Made by a program: the position numbers and the translations under genes. DNA of 64,000 nucleotides from the IMG/VR virus record IMGVR_UViG_3300031963_000006, positions 1-64,000 of that record; one strand, 5' to 3'. Shown here in pieces: positions 32,522-64,000 of the stretch. The notes beneath the pieces are model-generated. The model saw only the letters and a list, made by a program, of their open reading frames with translations, was not told the DNA's origin and did not search any database. Positions within the stretch are counted from its first letter, which is position 1; each line of letters opens with the position of its first letter.

Positions 32522-32533
32522 AAAATAAAAAAC

Positions 32534-35080: not shown

Positions 35081-35084
35081 TAAT

Positions 35085-35333
35085 ATGAGAATTAATATTT
35101 TAACAGAAAATGATAAAGTAGAACAAGTAAGAGAAGCTTGGGTTACTAAAAACGTAATGAAAATTCCAGTATCTCCAACAGGAGAAGAACCAGCAACACA
35201 TTGGTTTTGTTCAATGGCTGGAGAGGAATCCAAAATGATGGAGATTTACAATAAAAAGAATTTATCTATAATGGAATTAGAAATAGGTCCAAAAGAGTTT
35301 CTTAACAAATGGGGTCTGAAGATTATAAAATAA
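35085..35333 (+). CDS. small hypothetical protein, 82 aa
   Basis: Starts 4 nt after the beta-helix gene stop. Confidence 0.65.
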   Translation: MRINILTENDKVEQVREAWVTKNVMKIPVSPTGEEPATHWFCSMAGEESKMMEIYNKKNLSIMELEIGPKEFLNKWGLKIIK

Positions 35334-35938: not shown

Positions 35939-35945
35939 TATTTAT
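35939..35945 (+). promoter_or_regulatory. TATTTAT motif upstream of 35962/36079
   Basis: Lies immediately after the oxygenase stop codon. Confidence 0.35.
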
Positions 35946-36078
35946 ACAATAAAGTTGTTTGATGAAAGATTTGACCTTTAAAAGTCCGTTCAATTATAAA
36001 AAAAATTCTATATTTTTTAACAATAAACGAAATCTCGAATTTACAAAAAATTCGTTAATAAATAATTCGTAAAATTGG

Positions 36079-39372: not shown

Positions 39373-39377
39373 TATTA

Positions 39378-41156: not shown

Positions 41157-41172
41157 AAAGTATATATAAAAT

Positions 41173-43191: not shown

Positions 43192-43202
43192 TGATTTAGT
43201 AT

Positions 43203-49200: not shown

Positions 49201-50120
49201 TTACACCAACTAAGACAAACACTATGACACCTACGAGTTCAATTGGTGCAACACCACCTAGTACACAAACCCCTACATCAACATCAACACCAACAGTTAC
49301 CCAAACACAAACAAACACCAAAACAAATACCGTAACACAAACCAAGACTCCAACACAAACCATCGGGATTACCCCTTCAAATACTCAAACTACGACTCCT
49401 ACAGTAACTAATACAAATACAAATACTAAAACTCAAACTCCTACTAAAACTAAAACACCTACTCAAACCTCAACACCAACAACAACTTTACCAAAAACTC
49501 CTGACCAAACATTAACACCAACAACCACTCCAACTGTAACTAAAACCAAAACTCAAACACCATCTAATACAACAACTCAAACTCAGACTCCATCATCATC
49601 TGGACCTTGCCGAGCCCCTCAAGTTTTGTCAACAATCAGAACTGCCACTAGAATTTATAATGGATGCACTTGTATTGACCCAATTACAAGAGGGTGTAAT
49701 GAAACCTTCGGGAATTGTAGCAACTGTCCGGTCGGAAGTACTCAAGGGTGTTCACCTAATTGTGCTTGTTTTTCAAATTTAATAAACATCGGAACAGTTG
49801 GGAATGATTATAACGATAACGCAGGTTGTTCGTGGTATTCGGATTTTATGAATTTTACTAATAGGGCGGTACTACCTGTTGAAATTAAAGTAGAGGGTAA
49901 TATTACTAACTGGACTCAATTACAAGTCGGGATGAGAGTCTATCCAGGTAATCAATCACCTAACAACCCATGTGGTCAGGCGGCAGTTCGTAATTATTGG
50001 GTTAGTTCAAATTCGTTATTAAATTATTATAGCGATTTAGAAGGTCCTCCGGTAATTGTTCGAGTTCAAACAATCAATGGAATTAATCAAATAACATCAA
50101 TTTGGCAATGCACGGGTTAA
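43203..50120 (+). CDS. giant (2305 aa) M12B metalloprotease with PA14-like, repeated beta-sandwich, propeller-like and Cys-rich modules on Thr/Pro linkers
   Basis: HEQGHLMGSNH at 44280-44312, GTIMSYC, prodomain HYRGEIEG and FTCH; multiple TPT tracts. Confidence 0.85.
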   Translation: MKQLNLLRNINLDNSFEIDVSELRTVSSQKFDTMTMSIPLGGINKNVILKKVNIFSENFTVTTSDGENIEWDLGEHYRGEIEGEENSFCSLSFTNNEIYGHIVTTGSTYDINFVSGSTYRTSSVNEENPINFTCHHEPKEGQTYSNPYNPSLNTKKNTGLKTLNPYVADQATKLVKIDWVVDYDIRLLKGANTVSYITSIFNATKTLYENDGIFVVLNFLHIFTTSYSPYRTTPLTVPINDGCGYGSCSMVLLLFNFRYSLGNGIYPAGTSAANFSGDLKHLLTATFPTTSFSNPANKIQGLADGIQVLCNPISSDYTVVIDGQEYLATSTNSPVCFSQIDVNATANSTTYSSTVQVITHEQGHLMGSNHTHGCYWNTTNFVPGGNPIGCNRIDSCVTFETYTFLGCPSSVQTVFEIVNGVCPFPGTPPNSGGTIMSYCGLVGGGSQLFTNGFGPQPQQRIVNFINSLSCLQSLDTTPTPTPTLTLTPTKTPTSTPTKTINATPNPTQTSTITKTSTVTPTKSVGVSPNPTTTPTITPTNTVTRTKTKTPISTNTTTPTITPTNGDDCKNCTDQHPCITQTPTVTPTQPCDTVISQPSTSPLFNIGLSKYNNSGYTNIGTRFYSYGFQLGGSGSTYYFSNTNDVWKSTDSTNGPLNRSGIWSLSTFPSNTWLGFSFCIDVVDFANFYYVGFGADNAFRLTIDGIETINTLLGGYNNSTLTFSNWHVYQIPLYPGHHVLNVYGLNLSQTTSGVFGCEIYQNTLDELTGATSPNNLNIIFSTSSYSESNAEIIQSSTGLQLNSGYTCPSGFVYESCTGDCVRFISCPQPTLTPTTTNTPTKTNTINFVGVTPTKTPTPTKCCSTYILSSSPSDVTGSTFTIVRCVGNLFLTLPVPVGQSQTITCSYNATLINGLGSITQLPGCDCNTVTPTPTPTTIEDLGPCFNRWIPTYTFPFNQNQQTVFTGFTQGIFVEMVLSGSVEIATYNGNPPSCDVIRSFNPYTLTALKQVYAGGIGQSIFKQPTAQSAFVITFNFGQPINEVTLVIGGSGTYDFGGGNEVFIITTNTEIPTITSSINCYTTINNNQILSGANIVPPPVGSGTGGGLFTINCITDYTTLVISGAGGYDGSEISICEIYVPGTTRTPTPTITRTKTPTITPTTSFGFVPTSTPTITQTKTNTNTSTQTKTNTPTKTQTKTPGLPQSPTPTPTNCCSNFQISLLQGFNSAIYNVSSCQGQSGTFTYTGLSFITIECATNVTNVSGASIVRLPGCGCPTPTPTPTLTPTPVTQCSNLVWPDPTIVVNGITITVNRTGNTYLLIQPPSNDRPICGTGISIQYPSLSLGSGLNGIGVTGPPSFFSNWTVSLTFSQPITSITIALRGAGCTCQYSPNDPENFLFTTNTGIPTINPILICNGVVTGNEIILHSTAPIWEGGVTGDGIFEIKNCLGFTNLTITGDGGYLGTAIGICDTSINPNQCITPTPTQTKTPTQTKTPTVTPTSGGEINPCPSILLLQRQESFGEFYVSFYDFDLNTTYTLDVPNIDDFVQDIAYTFDKLWTVKPAIAPFDPNPVVGFREWNITWNPFVATYNRDILYPGPYIPGDNVIFGLGLFAINNTTLISSSGYDSFPERIIEVDISTNQTVITQKMALPSMTQASGDIYLRSDNLLFVGTKNFSTGVLGVNVYNYLSTSNTPVYSISIPIGTPGTPFGSSIAAIFEWDNEMYVMRTQSNPDKTETYRLNLTPPGSAEYVGVFSNLFNVFGGSSIVNCPTPTPTPTLTSTPTKTTTPTPTPTRTLLSSLCSGRFIAPTTYNGVNVTFASTGDIQTILSPSALLPSCGQMNWNGIPAYLCGASSNSTSTPTSSFSLTFNFSLSVNNVSIVLNGAGWGGNENFVFTTDTGIPTISSTFNCYSTIIGNQIISGAGAPSTPPNGPTGGAGVFIINNTNPYTSLTITGAGGYDGTYLNICDFNVEQITQTPTPTKTQTPTVSQTVTPTKTQTQTNTTTVTPTKTNTMTPTSSIGATPPSTQTPTSTSTPTVTQTQTNTKTNTVTQTKTPTQTIGITPSNTQTTTPTVTNTNTNTKTQTPTKTKTPTQTSTPTTTLPKTPDQTLTPTTTPTVTKTKTQTPSNTTTQTQTPSSSGPCRAPQVLSTIRTATRIYNGCTCIDPITRGCNETFGNCSNCPVGSTQGCSPNCACFSNLINIGTVGNDYNDNAGCSWYSDFMNFTNRAVLPVEIKVEGNITNWTQLQVGMRVYPGNQSPNNPCGQAAVRNYWVSSNSLLNYYSDLEGPPVIVRVQTINGINQITSIWQCTG

Positions 50121-50176
50121 ATGTTATTTTGTATCGTAGGTAATAAAAACTTCTTTTATTTAAATTAAATCTTATC

Positions 50177-50183
50177 TATTTAT
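50177..50183 (+). promoter_or_regulatory. TATTTAT motif upstream of 50213
   Basis: CTATTTATA ends about 29 nt before the ATG; the spacing and AAGGATGTCC start context match those at 59093. Confidence 0.4.
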
Positions 50184-50212
50184 ATTTAAAAGTATAAGAT
50201 TAATTATTAAGG

Positions 50213-53200
50213 ATGTCCCAATCAATTGTTATAGAGTATATAAATTTTAGTGGAGAGACTGCGGTAATTTTATTCACCCCATTTGGTGAAACCGATGTTA
50301 TTAATTTAGGTACCGTTATACTACCGTATGACTTTAATCCTTCATTATTAACACCCCCAAAAGATATTTATGGTTCATATAATGTTATAACTTCAGGAGG
50401 AAGTTGTTCAAATATAGTTACAATTTTACCGACCACACCAAACCAAACACGAACACCATCAAGGACCCCAACACAAACAAAAACTCAAACAATTACCCCG
50501 TCAAATACCGAAACCCCTACCGGTACCCCATGTCCGACTAAAACATCAACTCCGACTAATACCCAAACGCCAACCTTACAGCCAACTGAAACTCCAACAT
50601 CAACTTTATGTCCTACTAAAACCCCAACTGAAACTCCTAAAAGTACATTAACACCTACTAAAACGCCAACTCAAACTAAAACTCAAACGTCTACCCCAAC
50701 CAATACACCAACTAATACCAAAACACCGACCAAAACAAGTACCGAAACTCCGACTAATACTCCTACTAAAACAGAAACTCCAACCCAAACTAAAACCGAA
50801 ACACCTACAAAAACCCCTACAAAAACAAATACTCAAACACCCACTAATACTCCAACTAACACCGGAACTCCAACTCCAACTAACACCGGAACTCCAACTC
50901 AAACTAAAACGAGTACCCAGACTAATACAAGTACGCCAACTAAAACCGAAACCCCGACCCAAACTAAAACACCAACCATAACCCCAACCCAAACTAAAAC
51001 CCAAACCACGACTCCAACACAAACAAAAACCCCTACCCAAACAAAAACAGGTACTCCAACACAAACAAAAACAGGTACTCCAACAAAAACTAATACACCA
51101 ACTCAAACAGTTACACGTACAGTAACAAAAACATCATCCCAAACCCCAACTCCAACAACAACACCTCCAGGTGAGTATACAGGTACTAACGTTTGTGACC
51201 AATACATAGTAGTTTCAGATGGCTATAGAGGGACTCGTCAATTCCAAGTTGATATCGGTTCTCAGATTGGGTCATTAAATATATTTTTTAATGCCGGTAA
51301 TGTTCCTGATAGATTTTACTTCTATTACGATGGCGTATTAGAAAGAGATACAGGATTTAGAGGTGACCCGTCATTTAACCCTCAACTGAATTCCGCCGGT
51401 TATCCTTCTGTGAATGGTGCGGGAACCGGTTCTTTTGTGTTTAACAAATCCACATCTTCCCCAACAACCATTGAAGTTATCGTTTTTTCCCCATTCGAGC
51501 CTGTTGATTTTAACTTATATATCTCATGTCCTATACCTGAACCAAGTCAAACTCCGACTAAAACTCAAACACCTACTAGTACTCAAACTAAAACACCGAC
51601 AAAATCAATAACTCCAACAAAAACTTCAACTCCAACTATAAATCCATCACAAACCCCAACAAAAACCCAAACTCAAACTAAAACACCCACAAAGACATCA
51701 ACCACTACACAAACTCCTACAAAAACTTCAACACCTACACAAACACCAACATCGACGCCTCCATTTGAATTTAGTGGTACCGCAGTGTGTGACCAAAAAT
51801 TCTTTGGTTCTCCTTCAGATTATGGAACATTGTATTACACAATAGATGTTGGAAGTGAGATAGGACCTATAATTTTAAATGTAAATTCCAATTTAACCCC
51901 TGTTTGGTTTAGATTATATTGGAATTCAACATTAGTTATTGACACAGGATTTATAGGAAATCCATTGTATAATACCGAATTGAACAATTTAGGTTATCCT
52001 GATGTATCCGATACTGGTTTAGTTTCAATTTCATTTGATAAAACATTATCATCACCAACTGAAGTTATATTAGAAATAGTTGTTCCAATTTTAGGGGCGT
52101 CATGGAATGCTCTAGTTGAATGTCCGTCAGTCACTCCAACACCAACTCCAACAATGACCCAAACTAAAACCCCAACAATAACTTCAACTAATACTCCAAC
52201 AAATACCAATACTCCAACTCAAACTAAATCACAAACCCCAACAAATACAAATACACCAACTGTTACTAAAACGGTTAGGGCTACTTTAACCCCAACTCAA
52301 ACCCAAACTTCAACCATGACTCAAACTAGAACTCAAACAAAAACTCCAACAAATACTATAAGTCAAACCCCAACTCAAACCCAAACTCAAACCCCAACTA
52401 ACACTCAAACCCCAACTAACACTCAAACGGATACACCAAGGTCAACTAGAACCCCAACCGCAACTCCAACTGACCCGCCTCCAACTCCCCCATCGACAAA
52501 TACTCCAACGCAAACAAAAACAAATACTACAACTAATACCTCCACACCGTCTCAAACTGCAACACAGACTAAAACTCCTACTCAAACTACAACCCAAACT
52601 AAAACATCTACTCAGACCCCAACCCAAACTAAAACATCTACTCAGACCCCAACACCAACAAGAACTCCAGATGTATCTCCTCCATCAACACCTAGTCCAA
52701 CACCAACAAATACAGGAACTCAAACAAGTACCCCAACAAATACTCAGACTCAAACTCAAACTCCAACAAATACTCAGACTCAAACTCAAACTCCTACAAA
52801 TACGCAAACTCAAACTAATACTCCTACAAATACGCAAACTCAAACTAATACTCAGACTCCGACTAAGAGTCAGACACCAACTAACACCTCAACTAAGACA
52901 CAAACACCAACTCCGACCCAAACTTCACCAACTGCCGTTCCTTGTGCCTCTGAATGTATGATATTATTTAATACATCAACTGATTTATATGTTTATGATT
53001 TTACTGCCGATACATCAACTCAGATAACACCGGCAAACTTATTTGAAAGTGATGATATTGCTCACTATTGGAATCCAATTACAAATGATGGTAGACTTTG
53101 GATATACGGTAATCAAGGTTCGGGTAATCAATACTTTAGAGAATTTAGAATAACATCAATATGTCCATTTACTTTTGACCCTGATTATGGAGGTACAGGA

Positions 53201-55510
53201 ATTAATTATAGAAATATTCCATTCCCTGTTGGTATGCCGAGTCCTTTAGGGAATGGTTTAACCTACTTAGAAACTACCGGAGGTCAACACGTTTTAATTG
53301 GAAGTTTAACTCTAATAACCCCTAATAAGATGGTTAAGTTTTTTATAAACTCAACCGCTTTACCATATACCTCATCTTATACCGAGCTATTTGAAATATC
53401 TTCAGCGGTATTAACACCTGACATTGTTTATGGTGATGTTATTGTGACTAATAATTTGGCTGCGGGAGGACAAAAAATAGTATTTACAAAATATGACCCA
53501 TCACTTCCAGGTACTTCGTACCTAACACAATATGATTATAATGGTTTATTTTATGAATTTGACACTAATCCTATAGGACAAAATTCTCCACCATTAGCAA
53601 CTAACAATATAAATCAACCTCAAGGGTTATTCCAATGGGAGGGGTTAAATTATGTAATACAAAGTAATACCGGTGATGTTTATAACGTTAATGGTAATAT
53701 TCCATATGATAGAACTTTAGTTGGAAATGTCGGACAAATTAATGTTAGAGGTGCTTCTCAGACAATTAATTGTTTGGGTAATAATTTAAGTGGAGGGACT
53801 CCTTATTTTAGATATTCGAATAGAACCGATTTTGCCCCAATAAATAATGAATATGTACAAAGTCTTATACTGGTTAACGGTATTAAAGAATTTGATGTTG
53901 ATTTTGGCGATGGTACTATTATTAATTACAACACTACTTTAACGGATGTTACACAAACTCACGTTTATTCACCGTTAGCTCAAGTATATACCGCCACAAC
54001 ATATGGATTTAAATTAAATGGTAGTAATAACCCAAATATTATTAGTGTTGCTTCAGATATATCTATTAGATTTAGAAATATTTCAGAATTGTTAGCAGGT
54101 GACGATGACCCATATACTTTTGGTTCTTTCCCTGGAATGCTGGGCCTAAGATTTGAAAATTGTAGTTTTGCTAATTTGAACTCAGTTGAGACCTCTCCAT
54201 ATTTTACAACCATTCAATTTGACGGACATGATAACCAATTATTAGAACTTAATACTTTTAATTTAGGTTCTAAAACTAAGTTGGAACAAATTTTTATGGC
54301 TAATTGTGATATGACAGGATTTTCTCATGATTTAACATCAACTTTATTAAATCAAGGAGCGTCTGCCTTTAATTTTTTAAACAATCCACTCCTATCTGAG
54401 GTCAATATTGAATTACCAACAACAATATTAACATATTTTGGATTAAGAACTTCAAACAATATTTCCTCATTACAATCAATTAATAGTTTAAATGGTTTTG
54501 AAAATCTAACAGGATTAACCAAGATAGATGTTCAAGGTAATATTTTAACAGGGTGGACATATAATTTACCTGAAAATTTAATTGAATTTGATATTTCTGA
54601 TAATGCAAGACCTATTCTATTTGCACCAAATCAGTATGGTATAAGAGAATTAAATATTGATTTAACAAATAACGATAAATTAGAAATTTTAAATGTTTCT
54701 AGAAATAGACTTACGGCAATTACTGACACAATTATAAACTGTATAGTTTTGGATGAATTATATTTGGAAATAAATCAATTAACTACTATACCTGATTTAC
54801 CAAATTCAATTACTAGATTAGAATTACAATATAATTCTTTAGTAACTTCGTTTACATCTTACTTACCAAATAATTTACAGGTTTTCTATGGTTATAATAA
54901 TTCAAATATAACAGATTGGACTATACCTTTAACAAATACTCAGTTAACCACGTTCTATGTTTATAGTTGTAATATTTCAGGACCTTGGGATACCCAATTC
55001 CCAAGTACTATAAGAAATATTAGATTAGATGGGAATGATATTACATCGATTAATATAAACTTAGTGAATGGTGCAACCACACTTATAATGTCAGATAATA
55101 CCACATTAACACAGATGACTAATTTATCATCCAATTCTACTATCCAAACTTTAGAATTAAATAATTGTGGTTTCACAAGCTTCTCTAATTTGTTTTCAAC
55201 AAGTTTACCTTCAACTTTAAGGGTATTTAAATTTGATGAAAATCCAATAATTGGTTCGACATGGCCCACAAATGCCTTTTTGAACGCTAATATTAATAAC
55301 GTAGTTATGAGACGTTGTGGTTTAGATACGACATCAGTGAACAGAATCATAAACGACATTGCGGCAACAACTACCGCCACCAACGGTACTCTTAATTTGA
55401 GTAACCTAGGAGTTACTAATGGAACCCCTAATTCACCAAGAGATTCGGGTAGTGATGATGCATTAGCCATTTTACAAGCCGCCAATTGGACGGTTACAAC
55501 CGCACCTTAA
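50213..55510 (+). CDS. giant Thr/Pro-repeat protein with beta-sandwich modules, propeller-like domain, PKD-like domain and leucine-rich repeats
   Basis: Three long TPT tracts; two DTGF modules; FDVDFGDG (PKD-like); LRRs such as [14 protein letters not shown] and [28 protein letters not shown]. Confidence 0.82.
50852..50899 (+). repeat. perfect 24-bp tandem duplication
   Basis: CCAACTAACACCGGAACTCCAACT x2, in frame (PTNTGTPT). Confidence 0.85.
52591..52650 (+). repeat. perfect 30-bp tandem duplication
   Basis: AACCCAAACTAAAACATCTACTCAGACCCC x2. Confidence 0.85.
52741..52853 (+). repeat. 30-bp tandem repeat, about 4 imperfect copies
   Basis: TACTCAGACTCAAACTCAAACTCC(A/T)ACAAA x2, then TACGCAAACTCAAACTAATACTC... 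x2. Confidence 0.85.
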
Positions 55511-55523
55511 AAAATATAGAAGA

Positions 55524-56735
55524 ATGCAAAAGGTGGAAATAACTGATTTATGTGGAACCCCTCCTTATGTTGCTAAGGTGTGTGATTACACATACAATTA
55601 TTGTTATCCTGAAATAAGTGGTATAACAGATGTTCCTTTTTATATTGATATACCTGAAGAATTACAGGGGTCTTTTAGGGTAATAATACAATTAACAGAC
55701 ACTTCAGGATGCACCGAATTTAGATATATTGATTCAATAACTCCAACACCAACTGTAACCTTAACTCCATCTCCAACATCCACACCAACTTCAGAATGTA
55801 GATGTATCGTGTTTACTAACACATCGGCAGGAGACATTGATATCGGTTACACACAATGTGATGGTACCCCTTTTTATGGGTTATGTCCTGGCGATAACTT
55901 ATTGTATGCGTGCGGCTCGAATCCGTATGTAACAAATGATAAAGCGTATTTTAATATCTATGGTGATTGTATTAATAATTCTTGTTTTGACCCCCCGCTT
56001 CCATTTCCATTTGAGTCAACCCCTACAGTTACTCCAACACTAACTGTAACTCCGTCATATACCCCTTCGGTAACATTAACAAAAACTCCAACAGGAACAA
56101 TTACAAGTCCAACACCAACAAAAACTCAAACTAAAACACCTAGAATAACCACAACACCAACTGCCGCACCATTTGTTGCGTATTTATTCATTGAACCAAA
56201 TACAGGGTCAACCGAAATAGGTGAATGGATGTACACAGTAAACGGTCAAAATTTCTTTGGATTTAGTAACGGTAGTCAACCAACTCAAAACCAATCGGAT
56301 TTTAATAATGAATTAAATATATATGTTGATTTTTCAGGATGGACCGCAGGGACATTCCCTTCAGTAATAACACAAACAATTCCTAGAGTTTCAGGTGGAG
56401 TTGATGCATTTGGTAATTCTATAGTTGCTAATAACTTCACAACGGCTGTAGTATCAGCAAATACATTGAATGGTAGTGGATGGTTCGTTTGGATGATACC
56501 AACCGGAGCAACAAATGGTCTGTACCAATCTCAGATAGATTACAGTTTATCAAGTCCAAATCTTTTGACTCCATTATTTATGGAGTCAACAATTTATAGT
56601 TACACATTCTATTATACAGGCTCAACCATACCAAATACGACTTATCGAGTTTATACCACATTCCCAGGCGTAGATTTTAATTTATCAAACGCAGGAACGA
56701 ATATTTATTTTAGAGGTAACTCATTAAGTTCATAA
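55524..56735 (+). CDS. putative virion protein with Cys module and Thr/Pro linkers
   Basis: 403 aa; CRC...C...C module, TPTVT tracts and a beta-rich C-terminal domain. Confidence 0.75.
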   Translation: MQKVEITDLCGTPPYVAKVCDYTYNYCYPEISGITDVPFYIDIPEELQGSFRVIIQLTDTSGCTEFRYIDSITPTPTVTLTPSPTSTPTSECRCIVFTNTSAGDIDIGYTQCDGTPFYGLCPGDNLLYACGSNPYVTNDKAYFNIYGDCINNSCFDPPLPFPFESTPTVTPTLTVTPSYTPSVTLTKTPTGTITSPTPTKTQTKTPRITTTPTAAPFVAYLFIEPNTGSTEIGEWMYTVNGQNFFGFSNGSQPTQNQSDFNNELNIYVDFSGWTAGTFPSVITQTIPRVSGGVDAFGNSIVANNFTTAVVSANTLNGSGWFVWMIPTGATNGLYQSQIDYSLSSPNLLTPLFMESTIYSYTFYYTGSTIPNTTYRVYTTFPGVDFNLSNAGTNIYFRGNSLSS

Positions 56736-56736: not shown

Positions 56737-58242
56737 ATGGCCGAACCCTTTAAACTTCCAATATCTCCCGAACAACTAAACGGAATTCAATCAGTATCGA
56801 GAACTGAGGTTTTTGGTACAAACTATTCTGTATTAGGTATTGGTGGTTATATGGAGGTATATAACATTTCGGATTTAACATTTGAAATACCTTCAGGTGT
56901 AACTGGTACAATAAGTCTGAGTTCCAATACAATACCAATTAATTTTATAAAAGGTAGTGGGTCCGCATATTCTCCTGATATTCTTGTTATGGGTTCTGAC
57001 AATCTATCTTCAGGTAGAAGAAGATTGGGTATGTTGGCCTACGTATATGAGACTGACCAAATCTACCAATATCGTATAGATAATTATGATACTCTATGGG
57101 CGGCGGCAACAGGTGCCACAGGAGTTGGTGGTGATACAGTTGTTATGTCCGATTTTGGCACAACCGTAAAGAATAACTCCGTTGCCGGTCAAAACTTTAT
57201 AAACGCGTGGACAGCAAATACCATAGAGGATGTAAGTGGTGAGACTAGTGTTACTGCCGTTTGGAAAAAACTAACAACAGGTGGTGGAGGAGGTTCAGGA
57301 ATTACTGGAGGAACATATTACCCAAACACATTAACTTTAGATTTAGAATCCACAGGTGGAACAATATCGATTGGTAATGTAACAGGTCTTTATATCTCTG
57401 CGGGAACTTATTCGTCAGGAACTTCTACTTTGGATTTATATAATTCGACAGGAGGAACAATATCAGTAACTGGTATAACGGCTGGTTCAGGAGGGGCAAC
57501 AGGACTAACTCCAAGTGATTATGTTGTACAAGGTAAGTTAAATGCAAACCAATCAATCTCGGCAAATACAGATGTAATTATACAGTTTGTAGATGACTTT
57601 GACCCACAGAATTGGTGGAACGCATCTACGTATCAACTCACCCCTACAATTGCGGGATACTATAATATTTTTGTTGGGGTATGGCTTGATAATCCGGGTG
57701 TAACAAATAATCAAGCAAATATTCAGGTTAGAAAAAATGGTAATTCATTTGTAATTGTACAAAATCCATTAAACAATGTAACGGGTCAAGCATTCGAGGC
57801 CAGTAAAATTGTCTATTTGAATGGCACGACAGATTATATCGAATTTACAATCTTTCAAGGCTCAACAGGAAGTGTCAATATATTACAAGGAACTGCAAAT
57901 GGTTCGGGAACTTGGTTTTCCGCATCATTAATTGTCGGTGGAAACTCGGCGTTCACTGGAGGGGGAACAACAAACTACATTTCAAAATGGACAAGTTCTT
58001 CTAGTTTAGGAAACAGTCAAATTTTTGATAACGGAACTTCTGTAGGTTTTGGGACATCCTCACCTAGTTCTAGTTCAATAGTTGATTTGACATCATCATC
58101 TAAAGGGTTTTTACCTCCAAGAATGACGGAAGCTCAACGAAACGCGATATCAAGTCCAACAATTGGATTAATGGTATATCAAACCAATGGAAGTGATGGA
58201 GTGTATGTTTATAAAGCTTCGGGTTGGGTTCAGATGATATAA
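56737..58242 (+). CDS. fibre-like protein with C1q/TNF-like domain and Bacteroidota-type C-terminal module
   Basis: FDPQNWWNASTYQLTPTIAGYY...GTTDYIE...WFSASLI (C1q-like); C-terminal VGFGT..P....DLTS..KGFLPPRMT..QR.AI. Confidence 0.7.
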   Translation: MAEPFKLPISPEQLNGIQSVSRTEVFGTNYSVLGIGGYMEVYNISDLTFEIPSGVTGTISLSSNTIPINFIKGSGSAYSPDILVMGSDNLSSGRRRLGMLAYVYETDQIYQYRIDNYDTLWAAATGATGVGGDTVVMSDFGTTVKNNSVAGQNFINAWTANTIEDVSGETSVTAVWKKLTTGGGGGSGITGGTYYPNTLTLDLESTGGTISIGNVTGLYISAGTYSSGTSTLDLYNSTGGTISVTGITAGSGGATGLTPSDYVVQGKLNANQSISANTDVIIQFVDDFDPQNWWNASTYQLTPTIAGYYNIFVGVWLDNPGVTNNQANIQVRKNGNSFVIVQNPLNNVTGQAFEASKIVYLNGTTDYIEFTIFQGSTGSVNILQGTANGSGTWFSASLIVGGNSAFTGGGTTNYISKWTSSSSLGNSQIFDNGTSVGFGTSSPSSSSIVDLTSSSKGFLPPRMTEAQRNAISSPTIGLMVYQTNGSDGVYVYKASGWVQMI

Positions 58243-58704
58243 TTATTTACCCATCAACCTATTGAGAATATCCTGTTTTGTAAGTTCAACTTTTCTTTTA
58301 GTTTGAACTGTTTTTGTTTCAACCACTTTTGGCTTTACAGGTTCTTCTTTTTGTTCGGCAACAATCACATTAACTTTTGGTTTGTCCTCGACTTGCTCAG
58401 CAACAACAACATTAACTTTCTTGTTTGTCTTAACACTAAAGTCAGAAGCCCATGGCTCAAAATACACATCATCGGCAATAACTTCCAATCTCATATTACC
58501 TTTTGTACCTTCAGGTAAAAAGTGCTTTGTTTTAGGAATATTAACTTCACAAATACCGGTATTTTCTATTGAACCATTAAACATGTAGGACATTTCATCG
58601 GTTTCAATAACCAATCTAACTTTAGATTTAGATAATGAAGTACCTTCAATTTCAATATTACAATTGAATTTGTTTGCTTTATCTGTATATAAATTGTATG
58701 CCAT
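58243..58704 (-). CDS. hypothetical beta-sandwich protein (possibly BppU-N/Ig-like) with basic tail
   Basis: 153 aa; alternating beta strands; its stop abuts the convergent gene's stop with no gap. Confidence 0.6.
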   Translation of the reverse strand: MAYNLYTDKANKFNCNIEIEGTSLSKSKVRLVIETDEMSYMFNGSIENTGICEVNIPKTKHFLPEGTKGNMRLEVIADDVYFEPWASDFSVKTNKKVNVVVAEQVEDKPKVNVIVAEQKEEPVKPKVVETKTVQTKRKVELTKQDILNRLMGK

Positions 58705-58709
58705 ATCTC

Positions 58710-58716
58710 ATAAATA
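58710..58716 (-). promoter_or_regulatory. TATTTAT motif upstream of 58243..58704
   Basis: Plus strand ATAAATA at 58710-58716. Confidence 0.3.
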
Positions 58717-58721
58717 TATCG

Positions 58722-59054
58722 TTAATCTATATTTTTCACATTGACATTTATAAATCTTTGTTCTTTCATTAACACCTCAACATCTTTTAATCTTATTTTT
58801 ACTTGTTTGTTTTTCCCTTTTGACATTTTTTTCTCAATAACAATTTCATCCACCTCAAGTCTCAAAAATAGATTAATTAAAACTTCTTTTTCTTCTTTAT
58901 CTAATTCTTTAAGTTTGGCCCTAAATCTCCTTATGGATTGCATACCACCGGCTCCTTGAACCAATTTTTCAATAACGCAACCTTCTTTCCAAGTGAAAGG
59001 TGTTTCATTCCAAGGAAATGGTGTATCATCCCATGCGTAACAAACGAGTGCCAT
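58722..59054 (-). CDS. hypothetical protein (N-terminal W..T...W repeats)
   Basis: ATG at 59054 (MALVCYAWDDTPFPWNETPFTW) preferred because track start 59159 overlaps the divergent gene. Confidence 0.65.
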   Translation of the reverse strand: MALVCYAWDDTPFPWNETPFTWKEGCVIEKLVQGAGGMQSIRRFRAKLKELDKEEKEVLINLFLRLEVDEIVIEKKMSKGKNKQVKIRLKDVEVLMKEQRFINVNVKNID

Positions 59055-59056
59055 AC

Positions 59057-59063
59057 TATTTAT
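59057..59063 (+). promoter_or_regulatory. TATTTAT motif upstream of 59093
   Basis: CTATTTATA ends about 29 nt before the ATG. Confidence 0.4.
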
Positions 59064-59092
59064 AAGTAGTATATTTTTAATAAAATTAAAGG

Positions 59093-59818
59093 ATGTCCGA
59101 TATATCAAATCAATTAATAAAGGATTCATACAATTATGTTCTTCAGTCTGACTTATCAAGCGGTACGGTATATCGTATAGGTGGAAGTATACCTGTTAAT
59201 CCAAAATTTTTATCAGGATTAACAATTAATGGTGATTTTATATATTCAAATGGAACGGAACAAAATGGTTATGCTCTTTTAACTGACGGAACAGGATATG
59301 CTTATTGGGGGCCTGTATCATCAGCAACACCTTCTTCAGGTGTAACATTTATTGCGGTAGGAACAGGATTATCGGCGGACTCAACAACAGGAGCTGTCAC
59401 AATAATTAATACTGCTCCTGACCAAACAGTTACAATTACAGGTGGAACCAATATTCAAATTACGGGAACATATCCTGATTTCGGTGTAAACTTTACTGGT
59501 TCAACAACAGGAGGAACCGTTAGTGGAGATTACCTTCCATTAAGCGGGGGAACCGTAACAGGAGGAACAATATTCCAAAGCGGATTAACGGCAAATACAT
59601 TTTATTCATCAGGTCAAGTTGGTATTGGAACGGCAAGTCCAAATGCTAAGGCAATAATAGAAATTGCATCAACAACCCAAGGTGTTTTATTTCCAAGAAT
59701 GACAAAAGTAGAAAGGGATGCAATTACTTCTCCACCAATTGGACTTATACTTTTTGTGACTGATGATAATGAAGGTTTGTATATTTATAAAACAAGTGGA
59801 TGGGTTCAAATAATTTAA
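59093..59818 (+). CDS. Gly/Thr-rich fibre-like protein with Bacteroidota-type C-terminal module
   Basis: C-terminal VGIGTASP..KAIIEIASTTQGVLFPRMT..ERDAI...GWVQII is paralogous to the end of 56737..58242. Confidence 0.75.
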   Translation: MSDISNQLIKDSYNYVLQSDLSSGTVYRIGGSIPVNPKFLSGLTINGDFIYSNGTEQNGYALLTDGTGYAYWGPVSSATPSSGVTFIAVGTGLSADSTTGAVTIINTAPDQTVTITGGTNIQITGTYPDFGVNFTGSTTGGTVSGDYLPLSGGTVTGGTIFQSGLTANTFYSSGQVGIGTASPNAKAIIEIASTTQGVLFPRMTKVERDAITSPPIGLILFVTDDNEGLYIYKTSGWVQII

Positions 59819-59821: not shown

Positions 59822-62668
59822 ATGGCAAATAACGGAATATTTTATAGTTCGGGTAATAGTTTAAATTTTACAACAAGTGGAACAACTTGGCTTTCATTGA
59901 ACAGTCAAGGATTACTTTCAGGTTTAAATTTGTCAATGTCGGCAGTTACGGCTAATACCGTATCACAAGTTAATTATATTGATTTTACAACAGGGTCAAC
60001 AAATCCACTACAAACAGGAGGTAGAATATTTTTTGATAATGTATCAAAGGCGCTTTCTTATTATGATGTTGATAATAGTTTACTCCCAATTGCAATGGGA
60101 CAACAACTATACGCAAGAGTTTACAACGGTACAGGAGTTCAAATTGATAAGGGTAAAGTAGTTACAATTACAGGAACAACAAATGGATTACCAAGTATAA
60201 TATTGGCAGTTAATAATCACGCATTGGGTACACCAAGGCCAATTGGCGTTGCCGCTGAGAACATATCAAATGGAGGTACTGGGTTAGTTTTAAATAATGG
60301 TATTTTAAGTGGAATAACACTTAACACATTTGCAAACGGAGACATTCTATACCTTTCTGATACAACACCTGGTGGATATGTTAACTCCACAGCATCACTA
60401 GCATTTAGTGCTAGAACAAATGAAATCGGATATGTTCTACAAACGGGTTCTACAACGGGTAAGATTTATATTAATATTAATAATGAAGATAGTAACCTTA
60501 CACTAACCGATATTGAAAGAAATATCTTGGAAGGTAATGTCATTTCAAGTGGAGTATATGAATATACGGGAATGACTCAAGGAACAGGGGCAACTATTAA
60601 TGTTGCAATGGCAAGGGGATGGATAGTTAGAAATACATATGGATTTGCAACGCTACCTGATGTTGATAACATTTACTATACAGGTGGAACAAACATTCCT
60701 TTAACTAATCTTGCAACAGATGACGCAACATTTATTTTAATTAATAGTGCATCAACATTAGTTCAACAAACAACATTTCCAACACCCCAAGAAAGAAGAG
60801 AAAATATATTCTTAGGTAAAGTAGTTCACCCAAGTAGAATTTCAATTACATCAATTAACCAAACGGTTGACTTTGATGTGTCACCAATGGCCGCACTTCG
60901 AGACCTTTGGACTCCATTGAAATTGATTAATCAGGGTGTTTTAGTATCCCCAACAGGGACTGGAATGACGATTAATACATCATCGGGTGCATTGTGGGGT
61001 AATGGTATTGGATGGGTAACAAATCAACAAAATCCAGATAGTGTTACCATTTCCGGCGCATCACCAACCACATTCCAGTATAGAACACAATTAGGTCCAT
61101 TAACAGGTGGTAGTGTTACAACAGGAAATACAACAACAATAGACCCTGGTTACTATGATTTAAATGGAGTTGTTACTGCGGTAGGAGGGGGTTCAAACTC
61201 ATCAACAAATCAAAGAGTTTATTTATTTCCAACTGGTCTTGTCAGAATCCAATTGGGTCAAAAAGTATATGGAACACTTGCCGAGGCGGTTGCTGGTTCA
61301 CAAACTGAGACGTTTGTCGAATATTCTCTTAATAGAGAGAATGGTATATTAATAGGAATACTTTCACTTAACAAAAACGCATCTGTTGGTAATGGAGGTC
61401 TAGTAAACACTAACTATGCGGTGTTTAACTCAGTTTCAAAATTTGGTGAAGTATTAGGAGGAACTGGAGGTTTATCAACAACAACTCTCCAACAGGCTTA
61501 TGATAACTCCACTGAACCTGAAATTTTAATTAACTCAACATTAGATGGTTTAAGTATTAGAAATGGAACGGGTGGTGCCGATAATGTCACAAGTTTATTA
61601 CAAGGACAGAATACTGCCGGAACTACAACTTCATTTATTAGAGCTGACGGAGTATTTTCAGGAACATCAATATTTGGGACGGGTTTAACCGCTAATACAA
61701 TATCGGCATCGACATATTATAACCTTCCAGGTAGTTCATCCGCAAATTGCTTCACAGATTTTTTTGTAACTAATATAAGTGGATGTTCTCCTGTCAATAT
61801 GTTGTCACCACTTAATGTTCAAGATGGTTTATCTGTTACAGGGACTTCAACATTTACAAGTCAGGCTAATTTTACAGGAGGATTATCCGCAAATACATTT
61901 TCTGCGGGGACATATCAGAATTTACCTTCGTTTAATTCGGTACAAATTAACGGCACAACTCAGTTCTCAGGTAATACAAATAACTTTATTAATTTCAGTG
62001 GTATTAATATTACCATAACATCTGCGGCAACTAATACACTTGTATTTAGTGCGGGAACAGGTGGAGCCGGTGCCGTTAGTTCAGTTACTGCAGGCTCAGG
62101 ATTATCAGGTAATTCAACAACAGGGGCAATTACATTAATTAATACTCAAGTTCAAGGAATAACAGGAATTACCGCTGGTTCAGGTATTTCGGTTAGTACC
62201 ACCGATAATGTAACCACAATAACAAATGGAGTACAAGTTGCAATGCTGACATCCGACCAAACCAGTCTTACAACAACACTTGCGGACATTACTGATTTAT
62301 CTTTTGCGGTTGTTAGTGGGAGTATCTATAGATTTAGGTTTGTATTTCATTATGAGGCCTTTAATACCTCAACAGGTAGTAGATGGACTATTAATGGCCC
62401 TACCACCAGCATTCTGTCATATAGGTCAATGTATACTTTAGGTGTTGGAACACAAACATTAAACCCAGCCATAAATACTTATGATACACCAGCGACAGCA
62501 AACGCATCATCAACCGCAACCGCAGGAAATATTGCGATAGTTGAAGGTGTTATAAAACCTTCGGCCAATGGGACTGTTGTTGCAAGATTTGCTTCAGAGT
62601 TTCCGATTGCCGGTGCTTTTATTAGAGCAAAAGAAGGGTCATATGTTGAATATCAAAAAATTTCATAA
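59822..62668 (+). CDS. large Gly/Thr-rich tail-fibre/appendage-like protein
   Basis: 948 aa; N-terminal VYN.TG..I.KG.VV...PIGVAAE.I..G..G...LYLS module; C-terminal TNF/BclA-like beta domain (TTLADITDLSFAV...YRFRF). Confidence 0.7.
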   Translation: MANNGIFYSSGNSLNFTTSGTTWLSLNSQGLLSGLNLSMSAVTANTVSQVNYIDFTTGSTNPLQTGGRIFFDNVSKALSYYDVDNSLLPIAMGQQLYARVYNGTGVQIDKGKVVTITGTTNGLPSIILAVNNHALGTPRPIGVAAENISNGGTGLVLNNGILSGITLNTFANGDILYLSDTTPGGYVNSTASLAFSARTNEIGYVLQTGSTTGKIYININNEDSNLTLTDIERNILEGNVISSGVYEYTGMTQGTGATINVAMARGWIVRNTYGFATLPDVDNIYYTGGTNIPLTNLATDDATFILINSASTLVQQTTFPTPQERRENIFLGKVVHPSRISITSINQTVDFDVSPMAALRDLWTPLKLINQGVLVSPTGTGMTINTSSGALWGNGIGWVTNQQNPDSVTISGASPTTFQYRTQLGPLTGGSVTTGNTTTIDPGYYDLNGVVTAVGGGSNSSTNQRVYLFPTGLVRIQLGQKVYGTLAEAVAGSQTETFVEYSLNRENGILIGILSLNKNASVGNGGLVNTNYAVFNSVSKFGEVLGGTGGLSTTTLQQAYDNSTEPEILINSTLDGLSIRNGTGGADNVTSLLQGQNTAGTTTSFIRADGVFSGTSIFGTGLTANTISASTYYNLPGSSSANCFTDFFVTNISGCSPVNMLSPLNVQDGLSVTGTSTFTSQANFTGGLSANTFSAGTYQNLPSFNSVQINGTTQFSGNTNNFINFSGINITITSAATNTLVFSAGTGGAGAVSSVTAGSGLSGNSTTGAITLINTQVQGITGITAGSGISVSTTDNVTTITNGVQVAMLTSDQTSLTTTLADITDLSFAVVSGSIYRFRFVFHYEAFNTSTGSRWTINGPTTSILSYRSMYTLGVGTQTLNPAINTYDTPATANASSTATAGNIAIVEGVIKPSANGTVVARFASEFPIAGAFIRAKEGSYVEYQKIS

Positions 62669-62670: not shown

Positions 62671-62871
62671 ATGAAAAAATATATAATATACAATTATGTC
62701 GGGAATGGATTTTGGGGCGGGGAATCTCGAGGATTCCAAGAAGGATTTGTTTATAACGATAAAGTAGAAATATTCGAATCTAAAATTGATGCCGAAAATG
62801 AAATAACTAGCAACATCATATCTAATTATCAAGGAGTATTTGAGGTAATAGAGGTTTTCAGAAATATATAA
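62671..62871 (+). CDS. small hypothetical protein, 66 aa
   Basis: Starts 2 nt after the previous stop. Confidence 0.6.
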   Translation: MKKYIIYNYVGNGFWGGESRGFQEGFVYNDKVEIFESKIDAENEITSNIISNYQGVFEVIEVFRNI

Positions 62872-62944: not shown

Positions 62945-64000
62945 ATGAACAGAATATTCGTACAAATCGCAAGTTACAGAGACCCTGAGCTCGTCCCAAC
63001 AATTAAAAGTATGTTGGAAAATGCAAAAAAACCAAAAAATTTAAGATTCGGTATTGCTCGTCAATTTCACCCTGAGGACGGTTTTGATGACCTTTCAGAA
63101 TGGAAAAAAGATAAAAGATTTAGAGTTTTAGATATTCCTCATATGGATTCTGAAGGAGTTTGTTGGGCAAGAAATTTAACTCAACAATTGTACGAAGGTG
63201 AAGAATATACAATGCAAATCGATTCACATATGAGGTTTGAAAAGGATTGGGATGTTGAGTTTATTTCAATGATTAAACAACTTCAAAAAGATGGTTACCC
63301 AAAACCATTATTGACAGGTTACGTTTCATCTTTTGACCCTGATAATGACCCACAAGGTCGCGTTAGAGAACCATGGAGAATGGTATTTGACCGTTTTATT
63401 CCTGAAGGGGCAGTATTCTTTTTACCAGAATCAATTCCTGGATGGCAGATGATGACAAAACCAATTCCGGCTCGTTTCTATTCGGCTCACTTCTGTTTTA
63501 CACTAGGAGCGTTTAGTGAAGAAGTTCAACATGACCCTGATTTTTATTTCCACGGAGAAGAGATTTCGATAGCCGCAAGAGCGTATACCTGGGGTTATGA
63601 TTTATTCCACCCTCATAAAGTTCTTGTATGGCATGAATATACTCGTAAAGGTAGAGTTAAACAGTGGGATGATGTTAGAGATTGGGGTAAGAAAAATGAC
63701 TACTGTCACAAAAAGAATCGCTCATTGTTTGGAATGGATGATGAAGGAGAGATGGACCATGGTAAATATGGATTTGGTCCAATCAGAAGTTTAAGAGATT
63801 ATGAAAAATATTCAGGTTTGTTATTCTCAAAAAGAGCAGTACAACAATACACTTTAGATAAAGAATATCCACCAAATCCATATAACTACGCAAGTGAAGA
63901 AGAATGGATGAACGATTTTGCGGCAATATTCAAGCACTGTATTGATGTTGGTTATTCTCAAGTACCTGAAACTGACTATGAATTTTGGGTAGTTGCTTTC
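62945..64000 (+). CDS. GT60-family alpha-N-acetylglucosaminyltransferase (Skp1 hydroxyproline / mucin Thr GlcNAc-transferase-like), 3'-truncated
   Basis: Not in the ORF track because it has no stop in the window. Manual translation of 352 open codons: MNRIFVQIASYRDPEL...GVCWAR...MQIDSHMRF..DWD...FYFHGEEISIAARAYTWGYDLFHP...GFGPIRSLRDYEKYSG. Confidence 0.85.
   Translation, partial: MNRIFVQIASYRDPELVPTIKSMLENAKKPKNLRFGIARQFHPEDGFDDLSEWKKDKRFRVLDIPHMDSEGVCWARNLTQQLYEGEEYTMQIDSHMRFEKDWDVEFISMIKQLQKDGYPKPLLTGYVSSFDPDNDPQGRVREPWRMVFDRFIPEGAVFFLPESIPGWQMMTKPIPARFYSAHFCFTLGAFSEEVQHDPDFYFHGEEISIAARAYTWGYDLFHPHKVLVWHEYTRKGRVKQWDDVRDWGKKNDYCHKKNRSLFGMDDEGEMDHGKYGFGPIRSLRDYEKYSGLLFSKRAVQQYTLDKEYPPNPYNYASEEEWMNDFAAIFKHCIDVGYSQVPETDYEFWVVAF

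What the first reader, a model, noticed from the sequence alone, without database searches (positions are those of the whole stretch)
62945..64000. Unlisted GT60 gene directly downstream of the fibre/mucin-like gene block
Seen: a 352-codon open frame with IFVQIASYRD, QIDSHMRF (DSH metal motif), GEE and AR..T.GYD.F.P, co-oriented with the structural genes. Known: GT60 is related to the GT27 polypeptide GalNAc-transferases that initiate animal mucin O-glycans. Inference: this is the priming enzyme for the Thr/Pro substrates.
Basis: partly seen in the sequence, partly recalled or inferred. Interest (0 to 1): 0.72.

Follow-up and report, generated by a model that had tools for sequence, protein, structure and literature searches.

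The report
Phage GT60 glycosyltransferase beside mucin-like proteins
A freshwater jumbo phage carries a real GT60-family sugar-transferase gene next to its fibre genes and a dozen threonine/proline-rich "mucin-like" proteins. Comparative evidence favours, but does not prove, that this enzyme puts the first sugar on those proteins.

Summary
The frame at 62945-64000 is the first 352 codons of a 416-codon gene in a 321-kb jumbo phage with terminal repeats. It matches Pfam PF11397 (GT60) at E 2e-67. A confident model (pLDDT 95.5) is closest to Dictyostelium Gnt1 (GT60, E 2e-25), then to GT27 polypeptide GalNAc-transferases. The part beyond the window is an FN3-like β-sandwich.

The substrate claim is not shown, but several comparisons support it:
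- This genome encodes 12 Thr/Pro-rich proteins and the distant GT60-positive phage XacN1 encodes 14. Two GT60-negative jumbo relatives encode none.
- XacN1 virions hold Schiff-stained glycoproteins (published).
- An S/T/P-rich ORF lies in 12 of 39 bacterial GT60 loci and in 0 of 39 matched control loci (p = 9e-5).
- In Burkholderiales the gene sits inside type VI secretion clusters. There 9 of 10 nearby VgrG spikes carry Pro/Thr(Ser) repeat tails, against 0 of 20 distal paralogues.

The gene heads a conserved module: GT60, then variable transferase and methyltransferase genes, then an HtrL_YibB-like protein. GT60 and HtrL_YibB are fused in some relatives. The window also encodes GDP-sugar enzymes and GT11- and Fringe-like transferases.

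Verdict: a new variant of phage-encoded virion glycosylation, with the acceptor still inferred.

The parts
62945..64000 (+). GT60-family (PF11397) glycosyltransferase gene, first 352 of 416 codons. The gene continues 195 nt beyond the window.
   Evidence: The AF2 model has pLDDT 95.5. Best fold hits are Gnt1 (GT60) and then GT27.
63221..63229 (+). D93-S94-H95, a DxH-type metal/nucleotide-sugar motif
   Evidence: Read from the sequence. D, S and H are conserved in 45, 44 and 45 of 46 diverse homologues. The role is inferred from the DxH motif of GT27/GT60 enzymes (established knowledge), not measured.
63551..63634 (+). HGEE (aa 203-206) to H230. E205, E206, G217, P223 and H230 are invariant, so H230 is the candidate third metal ligand.
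   Evidence: Invariant columns of alignment A1. The functional role is inferred.
63920..64000 (+). Start of the C-terminal FN3/Ig-like β-sandwich domain (aa ~326-416, mostly beyond the window)
   Evidence: Domain model pLDDT 94. VIA-align Z 7.7 to FN3 domains, which is only a generic fold match. Foldseek gave nothing significant.
62671..62871 (+). 66-codon ORF between the fibre gene and the GT60 gene, unknown
   Evidence: No PHROG hit.
59822..62668 (+). 948-aa tail-fibre-like protein
   Evidence: phrog_16641 and phrog_5668 'tail fiber protein', E 1e-14.
56737..59818 (+). 501-aa and 241-aa fibre-like proteins that share a C-terminal ...PRMT..R.AI.SP..GL...Y.....G.Y.YK.SGWVQ.I motif. Two small minus-strand ORFs lie between them.
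   Evidence: Translations. No family hit.
29035..56735 (+). Block of Thr/Pro-rich ('mucin-like') proteins at 29035-32493, 36079-39372, 39378-41156, 41173-43191, 43203-50120, 50213-55510 and 55524-56735. These are the proposed acceptors.
   Evidence: Each has at least 60% T+P in a 60-aa window (genome coordinate = window + 132). Reprolysin-like domains were found, an LRR domain, and the shared phrog_15511 domain.
16225..19281 (-). Nucleotide-sugar genes: GDP-mannose 4,6-dehydratase (16225-17202), DegT-type aminotransferase (17199-18353) and NAD epimerase/reductase (18355-19281)
   Evidence: Pfam E 9e-116, 1e-72 and 3e-37. PHROGs.
19278..26348 (-). Further glycosyltransferases: GT11 fucosyltransferase-like (19278-20063), Fringe-like/GT31 (21068-21694), GT2-like (22350-23765) and a PHROG glycosyltransferase (25080-26348). 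A GT2 gene also lies at 12776-13579.

Best explanation
The gene encodes a soluble, cytoplasmic GT-A enzyme of family GT60. It has no signal peptide or membrane anchor, and the Rossmann strand starts at residue 3. The proposal is that it uses a UDP-HexNAc, most likely UDP-GlcNAc as in characterised GT60 enzymes, with a DxH-bound divalent metal. It would put the first sugar on Thr/Ser hydroxyls of the phage's own Thr/Pro-rich repeat proteins before or during virion assembly. The primed sugar would then be extended and O-methylated. The enzymes for that would be the conserved HtrL_YibB-like partner (789-aa protein), the variable transferase/methyltransferase genes between the two, and possibly the GT11-like and Fringe-like transferases fed by the phage's GDP-sugar genes. 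The result would be mucin-like glycoprotein fibres or decorations on the particle.

Shown here: family membership, fold, conserved motifs, gene neighbourhood, and co-occurrence with S/T/P-rich proteins. Inferred: donor sugar, acceptor residue, order of steps, and virion location of the acceptors.
For: (1) Family and fold. PF11397 scores E 2.4e-67. The model has pLDDT 95.5. The best Swiss-Prot fold hit is Dictyostelium Skp1-hydroxyproline GlcNAc-transferase Gnt1 at E 2e-25 and 25% identity over aa 2-325. The following ~30 hits, and the top PDB hits, are polypeptide GalNAc-transferases. DSH, GEE and H230 are (nearly) invariant in 46 homologues.

(2) Candidate substrates are present. The genome has 12 proteins with at least 60% T+P windows, seven of them in the block just upstream and one (704 aa) conserved just downstream. 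At least one such ORF lies within 10 kb in 67 of 80 related IMG/VR loci.

(3) Independent phage lineage. Xanthomonas phage XacN1 (GT60 46-50% identical, 50% GC) has 14 such proteins, some next to tail-sheath genes. Its virions show at least 2 Schiff-stained glycoprotein bands (PMC5852040). GT60-negative members of the same jumbo-phage group, SCTP-2 and Atu_ph07, have 0 and 0 in 400 kb each.

(4) Bacteria. An ORF with at least 65% S+T+P lies in 12 of 39 GT60 loci and in 0 of 39 control loci from the same contigs (Fisher p = 9e-5). Several of these ORFs abut the GT60 gene, and the positives come from at least 8 families in 5 phyla.

(5) T6SS clusters of Burkholderiales carry the gene after tssA. 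There 9 of 10 nearby VgrGs have Pro/Thr(Ser) repeat tails, against 0 of 20 distal paralogues in the same genomes.

(6) Pathway partners. The HtrL_YibB-like protein is a conserved neighbour in 78 of 82 phage loci and is adjacent in about 25 bacterial loci. It is fused to GT60 in P0177 and P0228. Another relative fuses GT60 to TPR repeats.

(7) No hmC-type route is evident. The only thymidylate-synthase homologue keeps the dUMP-type Asn in the motif PFNIASY.
Against: No direct evidence exists for the acceptor, donor or product. Pro/Thr linkers are common in unglycosylated proteins. The Thr/Pro-rich phage proteins are not shown to be virion parts. Twenty-seven of 39 bacterial GT60 loci have no S/T/P-rich neighbour. 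The co-occurrence tests use few independent lineages and a home-made ORF caller. The phage comparison is two genomes against two. The identity of the XacN1 glycoproteins is unpublished, and XacN1 has a second glycosyltransferase. Other GT-A enzymes that act on polysaccharide or teichoic acid (GlfT2, TarS) also appear among the fold hits at E ~1e-8. HtrL/YibB lies in an LPS-core gene cluster in E. coli (my own knowledge), which would fit a glycan made on a lipid or sugar acceptor.
Confidence: 0.55

Rival explanations
1. The enzyme glycosylates phage proteins, but not the Thr/Pro repeats. Targets would be the capsid, tail tube or fibre proteins at other sites, as in mycobacteriophages where glycans sit on C-terminal tails of capsid and tail-tube subunits.
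For: Virion glycosylation by phage transferases is known (Freeman et al. 2023, as cited in PMC12619734). The gene lies next to fibre-like genes. The XacN1 glycoprotein bands are unidentified.
Against: This does not explain the repeated, cross-phylum linkage of the family to S/T/P-rich proteins and VgrG tails. It also does not explain the all-or-none pattern among jumbo phages.
Confidence: 0.15
2. The GT60/HtrL-like module builds a non-protein glycan. This could be a polysaccharide, a lipid-linked oligosaccharide or a change to the host envelope, made during infection for example to block superinfection or alter the cell surface.
For: The window holds a large sugar-nucleotide and transferase block typical of surface-polysaccharide loci. 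HtrL_YibB is linked with LPS core genes in E. coli (my own knowledge). Fold hits include GlfT2 and TarS. Most bacterial GT60 loci have no S/T/P-rich neighbour.
Against: The closest characterised relatives by sequence and fold all act on polypeptides. The enzyme is soluble with no membrane segment. No flippase or polymerase gene was seen among the ORFs scanned (not exhaustive). The statistical link to S/T/P-rich proteins is not predicted by this reading.
Confidence: 0.15
3. The acceptor is hydroxyproline in the Pro-rich repeats, as for Gnt1 on Skp1, rather than Thr/Ser.
For: The nearest characterised fold relative, Gnt1, is a Hyp-GlcNAc-transferase. A 2461-aa relative (P0126) fuses four GT60 domains to P4H-like 2OG-Fe(II) oxygenase domains.
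Against: The phage genome has no PF13640 match. Some associated repeats, such as the S/T-rich PT stretches, are as rich in Thr/Ser as in Pro.
Confidence: 0.07
4. The enzyme glycosylates phage DNA, that is a hypermodified base, to evade restriction.
For: Phage glycosyltransferases often do this. The gene lies within 15 kb of PolB, both here and in XacN1.
Against: No GT60 or GT27 relative is known to act on DNA (my own knowledge). The single ThyA homologue looks like an ordinary dUMP enzyme. The association with S/T/P-rich proteins and T6SS clusters has no DNA logic.
Confidence: 0.03

Closest known systems
Dictyostelium Gnt1 (Skp1-hydroxyproline α-GlcNAc-transferase, CAZy GT60) and the Trypanosoma cruzi mucin pp-αGlcNAc-transferase for which PF11397 is named
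   Same: Same Pfam family (E 2e-67) and best fold match (E 2e-25, 25% identity, aa 2-325). Like Gnt1 it is soluble and cytoplasmic. It has the DxH motif and is proposed to prime a polypeptide with the first sugar.
   Different: It is prokaryotic-viral and carries an extra C-terminal FN3-like domain. No prolyl hydroxylase partner is present. The proposed acceptors are many long Thr/Pro repeats rather than one Hyp of Skp1. Activity is untested.
Animal GT27 polypeptide GalNAc-transferases (mucin-type O-glycan initiation)
   Same: GT-A catalytic fold. These are the top PDB matches, E 2e-10 to 1e-8, TM ~0.5. The logic of priming dense S/T/P repeats is the same.
   Different: Only 12-17% identity and no ricin-type lectin domain. 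It works in the cytoplasm, not the Golgi, and belongs to another CAZy family. It is not a member.
Phage- and giant-virus-encoded virion glycosylation (mycobacteriophage capsid/tail-tube O-glycans; chlorovirus and mimivirus self-encoded glycan machinery)
   Same: The virus brings its own transferases and sugar-nucleotide genes, and the target is proposed to be particle proteins. The XacN1 paper already suggested this for its ORF334, the homologue of this gene.
   Different: A different enzyme family initiates the glycan. The acceptors are multi-kilodalton mucin-like repeats in a dozen proteins. The module is shared with bacterial T6SS clusters.
Homologues in isolated phages: Xanthomonas XacN1 ORF334, Xoo-sp13 gp304, Stenotrophomonas CM1 and RAS14
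   Same: 46-51% identity over the full length, including the C-terminal domain. They are followed by sugar-tailoring genes and a homologue of the 789-aa protein. XacN1 encodes many Thr/Pro-rich proteins.
   Different: Their tailoring gene is a carbamoyltransferase instead of methyltransferases. The hosts are Proteobacteria and GC is 50%. They are annotated only as 'glycosyltransferase'.

Membership tests
CAZy GT60 / Pfam PF11397 (GlcNAc) | Sequence match to the family profile above the curated threshold | tested here: met
   228 bits against a cut-off of 21, E 2.4e-67, on the window part. The full protein scores 223 bits.
CAZy GT60 / Pfam PF11397 (GlcNAc) | GT-A fold closest to a characterised GT60 enzyme | tested here: met
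   The model (pLDDT 95.5) is nearest to Gnt1 Q8T1C6 at E 2e-25, about 14 orders better than the next family.
CAZy GT60 / Pfam PF11397 (GlcNAc) | Conserved DxH metal motif and downstream acidic and His residues | tested here: met
   D93-S94-H95, E205, E206 and H230 are present and (nearly) invariant in 46 homologues. That they bind metal or donor is inferred.
CAZy GT60 / Pfam PF11397 (GlcNAc) | UDP-GlcNAc donor, retaining α-linkage | not testable with these tools
   Needs an enzyme assay and NMR or MS of the product.
CAZy GT60 / Pfam PF11397 (GlcNAc) | Polypeptide acceptor (Thr or hydroxyproline) | tested here: inconclusive
   Only indirect evidence is available: co-occurrence with S/T/P-rich proteins. 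The complex prediction gave no answer.
Mucin-type O-glycosylation system (works-like comparison) | Tandem S/T/P-rich acceptor domains encoded with the initiating transferase | tested here: met
   12 Thr/Pro-rich proteins are in the genome, 7 of them directly upstream.
Mucin-type O-glycosylation system (works-like comparison) | Elongating transferases and donor supply | tested here: met
   Present are a Fringe-like/GT31, a GT11, GT2s, HtrL_YibB-like proteins, GDP-mannose dehydratase, an epimerase and an aminotransferase. Their link to this glycan is inferred.
Mucin-type O-glycosylation system (works-like comparison) | Glycans demonstrated on the repeats | not testable with these tools
   The only published hint is the Schiff-stained bands in XacN1 virions, whose identity is unknown.
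GT27 polypeptide GalNAc-transferases | GT27 sequence signature and C-terminal ricin-type lectin domain | tested here: not met
   No Pfam or PDB sequence match to GT27. The C-terminal domain is FN3-like, not a β-trefoil. The likeness is in fold only.

The most novel reading that the evidence does not exclude
The GT60 + HtrL_YibB-like pair may be a widespread prokaryotic cytoplasmic 'mucin-type' O-glycosylation system. It would decorate Pro/Thr/Ser repeats on parts of contractile injection machines, such as jumbo-phage fibres and decorations and the C-terminal tails of T6SS VgrG spikes. It may also share ancestry with the eukaryotic enzymes that start mucin and Skp1 glycans.
Probability: 0.35. 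Interest if true: 0.85.

Novelty: new variant of a known kind. Interest (0 to 1): 0.68.

Why it matters
If true, this phage lineage and its Xanthomonas and Stenotrophomonas relatives make their own mucin-like glycoproteins. They would do so with an enzyme family so far characterised only in protists. The lineage is common in lakes: hundreds of variants at about 77% identity, found in metagenomes from 2019 to 2025.

That would add a second, mechanistically distinct case of phage virion O-glycosylation. It would bear on adsorption, particle stability, and immune or grazer recognition. It would also assign a function to thousands of PF11397 genes of untested function in bacteria.

The same enzyme sits in T6SS clusters beside VgrG spikes that carry (TP)n tails. 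This suggests an unreported post-translational modification of the T6SS spike, and it is directly testable in culturable Paraburkholderia, Cupriavidus or Achromobacter. XacN1 is a culturable phage system for the same test.

Tried and rejected
- **PDB sequence searches.** Searches with the protein and with a 46-sequence profile found nothing. No GT60 structure is reachable by sequence.
- **Complex prediction.** GT60 with a 36-residue Thr/Pro peptide of the neighbouring 1765-aa protein gave no answer, score 0.00 with controls not run. This counts neither for nor against binding.
- **C-terminal domain as a lectin.** I folded it alone to test whether it is lectin-like as in GT27. It is only a generic FN3/Ig-like sandwich (Z 7.7, Foldseek E > 0.04), so no function follows.
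- **Hydroxyproline route.** The genome has no PF13640 match.
- **DNA-modification route.** The single thymidylate-synthase homologue looks canonical.
- **Literature.** 'GT60 + phage' and 'PF11397' gave nothing relevant. 'VgrG + glycosyltransferase + glycosylation' gave no report of VgrG-tail glycosylation.
- **Moraphages.** The 'moraphage' paper describes freshwater jumbo phages predicted to infect Bacteroidota, with core glycosyltransferases. I could not establish that this phage belongs to that lineage.
- **Metatranscriptomes.** Two runs hold a few short exact contigs in the fibre gene and one in the GT60 gene. This is too little to call transcription, and DNA carry-over is not excluded.
- **Promoter/terminator scan.** It found fewer sites than in shuffled sequence and is uninformative.
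- **Downstream genes.** PHROGs and Pfam gave nothing for the 314-, 313- and 199-aa genes. Language-model look-alikes suggest a Glyco_trans_1_2-like enzyme (314 aa, score 0.97) and HtrL-like or GT-A domains (750 aa, score 0.91). These are leads only.

Full report
**What is there.** The frame at 62945-64000 (+) is real. It is the first 352 codons of a 416-codon gene. The window is bases 133-64132 of a 321,403-bp viral record with direct terminal repeats, and the full gene is L001:1501-2751. The upstream 73 bp are AT-rich with no Shine-Dalgarno sequence. The genome is a jumbo tailed phage. It has tail-fibre PHROGs, a family-B DNA polymerase and a prohead-protease-like gene a few kb downstream. 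The locus is syntenic with Xanthomonas jumbo myophages. Near-identical DNA occurs in many lake and freshwater metagenomes from 2019 to 2025. The closest homologues in MAGs are binned as Saprospiraceae or Bacteroidia. A Bacteroidota host is therefore likely but not shown.

**Family.** Pfam PF11397 ('GlcNAc', the GT60 family) matches at E 2.4e-67, and phrog_24687 'glycosyltransferase' at E 3.9e-143. More than 7,000 homologues exist in public data. The best 120 are 76-92% identical and 414-421 aa long, several of them on contigs of 130-260 kb, so this is a conserved gene of an abundant phage lineage. A representative search found 4,534 clusters. A 46-sequence alignment gave a model with pLDDT 95.5. 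Its best Swiss-Prot fold match is Dictyostelium Gnt1, the GT60 Skp1-hydroxyproline GlcNAc-transferase, at E 2e-25 with 25% identity over aa 2-325. All following hits, and the top PDB hits, are GT27 polypeptide GalNAc-transferases at about 1e-10. D93-S94-H95, E205-E206 and H230 are invariant or nearly so. Residues ~326-416, which the window cuts off, form an FN3/Ig-like β-sandwich. That match is generic (Z 7.7), and the domain is not the ricin-type lectin of GT27 enzymes. The protein has no signal peptide or membrane segment, so it should work in the infected cell's cytoplasm.

**Neighbourhood.** In 82 related loci the conserved order is GT60, then 1-6 kb of variable genes, then a 789-aa protein, then a 704-aa Thr/Pro-rich protein, then PolB. 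The 789-aa protein combines an FtsJ-like methyltransferase with an HtrL_YibB domain. In this phage the variable stretch holds:
- a probable Glyco_trans_1_2-like enzyme (314 aa, lead only);
- a 750-aa protein with a CmcI-like sugar O-methyltransferase part;
- two unknown genes.

In XacN1 and Xoo-sp13 a carbamoyltransferase sits in that position. A hypervariable tailoring stretch between two conserved transferases is what one expects of a surface-exposed glycan under diversifying selection (inference). The fibre genes upstream are not a conserved neighbour: the 948-aa gene is found in only 10 of the 82 loci. Residues 231-789 of the 789-aa protein are encoded directly beside the GT60 homologue in about 25 bacterial loci from several phyla. 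That part is fused to GT60 in P0177 and P0228. Other relatives fuse GT60 to TPR repeats, or fuse four GT60 domains to P4H-like oxygenase domains. The minus-strand block at window 12.7-26.3 kb adds GDP-mannose 4,6-dehydratase, a DegT aminotransferase, an epimerase/reductase, a GT11 fucosyltransferase-like enzyme, a Fringe-like/GT31 enzyme and further GT2-type enzymes. The phage therefore invests heavily in glycan synthesis.

**Is the acceptor the Thr/Pro-rich proteins?** This cannot be shown with these tools, so I tested predictions of the idea.
1. *Substrates present.* The genome encodes 12 proteins with at least 60% T+P in a 60-residue window. Seven lie in the block 29-57 kb just upstream.
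2. *Independent phage lineage.* XacN1 has a GT60 only 46-50% identical, 50% GC and a proteobacterial host. It encodes 14 such proteins of the same TPTxT style, three of them next to the tail-sheath genes. Its authors saw at least two Schiff-stained glycoprotein bands in purified virions and proposed that ORF328 and ORF334 make them; ORF334 is the GT60 homologue (PMC5852040).
3. *GT60-negative relatives.* SCTP-2 and Atu_ph07 belong to the same jumbo-phage group according to that paper. They have no PF11397 match and no such protein in 400 kb each.
4. *Matched bacterial control.* Of 39 bacterial loci holding a homologue, 12 contain an ORF with at least 65% S+T+P. None of 39 control loci taken 40-50 kb away on the same contigs does (Fisher one-sided p = 9e-5). 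The positives come from Saprospiraceae, Lewinellaceae, Gemmatimonadaceae, Verrucomicrobiota, Acidobacteriota and Gammaproteobacteria as well as Burkholderiales. In several the rich ORF abuts the GT60 gene.
5. *T6SS clusters.* In Burkholderiales and a Neisseriaceae genome the homologue is the last gene of a T6SS operon: TagJ, TssE, TssF, TssG, TssA, a fimbrial-like protein, then GT60. This operon faces Rhs, VgrG and TssM genes. Nine of the ten VgrGs within ~20 kb end in long Pro/Thr(Ser) repeats such as (TP)n, (PPPTE)n, (PEPT)n and (EEPPPS)n; the tenth has (EEPAASD)n. None of 20 distal VgrG paralogues in the same genomes has such a tail (p = 8e-6 when 8 of 10 are counted).

These proximal VgrGs are orthologues, so this is few evolutionary events. 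The repeat unit differs between species while the composition is kept.

**Caveats.** All of this is association. The ORF calls are my own and simple. The lineages are few. Pro/Thr linkers exist without glycans. The Thr/Pro-rich phage proteins carry reprolysin-like protease and LRR domains but are not shown to be in the virion. The complex prediction gave no answer.

**Rivals.** Glycosylation of other virion proteins, synthesis of a non-protein glycan, a hydroxyproline acceptor and DNA glycosylation were all considered. The genome lacks a prolyl hydroxylase match. Its only thymidylate-synthase homologue keeps the dUMP-type Asn. This weakens the last two rivals.

**Verdict.** The 'priming enzyme for Thr/Pro substrates' reading is the best-supported explanation (about 0.55) but remains inferred. 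Against the literature searched, phage-encoded virion glycosylation is known and was suggested for XacN1. What I did not find reported is the GT60 family as initiator, its tie to mucin-like repeats across phages and bacteria, the GT60/HtrL-like module, and the T6SS-VgrG link. I therefore rate it a new variant of a known kind.

Noticed in passing
L128:458-17170, with L129, L137, L145, L148, L154, L158, L162 and L117 (bacterial loci): PF11397 homologues are embedded in type VI secretion clusters of Ralstonia, Paraburkholderia, Trinickia, Achromobacter, Cupriavidus and a Neisseriaceae genome, after tssE-F-G-A and a fimbrial-like gene. The neighbouring VgrG spikes end in 60-200-residue Pro/Thr(Ser) repeats, while distal VgrG paralogues do not. 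I found no report of this.
   Followed up: partly
window 12776-26348, minus strand: A sugar block holds GT2, GDP-mannose 4,6-dehydratase, DegT aminotransferase, NAD epimerase/reductase, a GT11 fucosyltransferase-like enzyme, a Fringe-like/GT31 enzyme, a GT2-like enzyme and another glycosyltransferase. PhoH, dUTPase and an exonuclease are interspersed. GT60, GT31-like and GT11-like together would fit a Fuc-Gal-HexNAc type core, but this is speculation.
   Followed up: partly
window 39378-41156, 41173-43191, 43203-50120: Three of the Thr/Pro-rich proteins carry reprolysin-like (M12B) zinc-protease domains. The 2305-aa protein shows HEQGHLMGSNH. Seven proteins share a ~80-aa domain of the unknown-function family phrog_15511.
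   Followed up: no
window 50213-55510 (aa 1479-1680): The 1765-aa Thr/Pro-rich protein ends in a leucine-rich-repeat domain. Its only PDB sequence matches are the LRR parts of SspH1/IpaH proteins, with no sign of the ligase part.
   Followed up: no
window 56737-58242 and 59093-59818: The 501-aa and 241-aa proteins share a ~45-residue C-terminal motif (…PRMT..R.AI.SP..GL…G.Y.YK.SGWVQ.I). It is probably a common fibre tip or assembly domain. No family hit.
   Followed up: no
L002:8407-8994 (minus strand; genome 71406-71993): An Endo VII/HNH-like endonuclease gene lies in the opposite orientation inside the glycosylation cluster. It is present in only 5 of 82 related loci, so it is probably a mobile homing endonuclease.
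   Followed up: no
L002:9243-11357 (genome 72242-74356): The 704-aa protein has a P-domain (proprotein-convertase type) and four Thr/Pro stretches. It is conserved directly after the glyco-module in 66 of 82 loci at 55-80% identity, which makes it a candidate conserved acceptor.
   Followed up: partly
P0126 (2461 aa, public protein cluster representative): A giant relative has four GT60 domains fused to P4H-like 2OG-Fe(II) oxygenase and AhpC/TSA domains. This would put a hydroxylase and a glycosyltransferase in one chain, echoing the Skp1 pathway.
   Followed up: no
L085:1480-2583 (genome 240231-241334): The thymidylate synthase homologue (E 1e-96) has a ~60-residue insertion. It keeps the catalytic Cys and the dUMP-type Asn, so it looks like an ordinary ThyA.
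   Followed up: partly
window 58001-64000: Near-identical DNA (80-99% of sampled words) is found in about 18 lake or freshwater runs from 2019-2025, some labelled 'fungus metagenome'. Two lake metatranscriptomes contain a few exact short contigs in the fibre and GT60 genes.
   Followed up: partly
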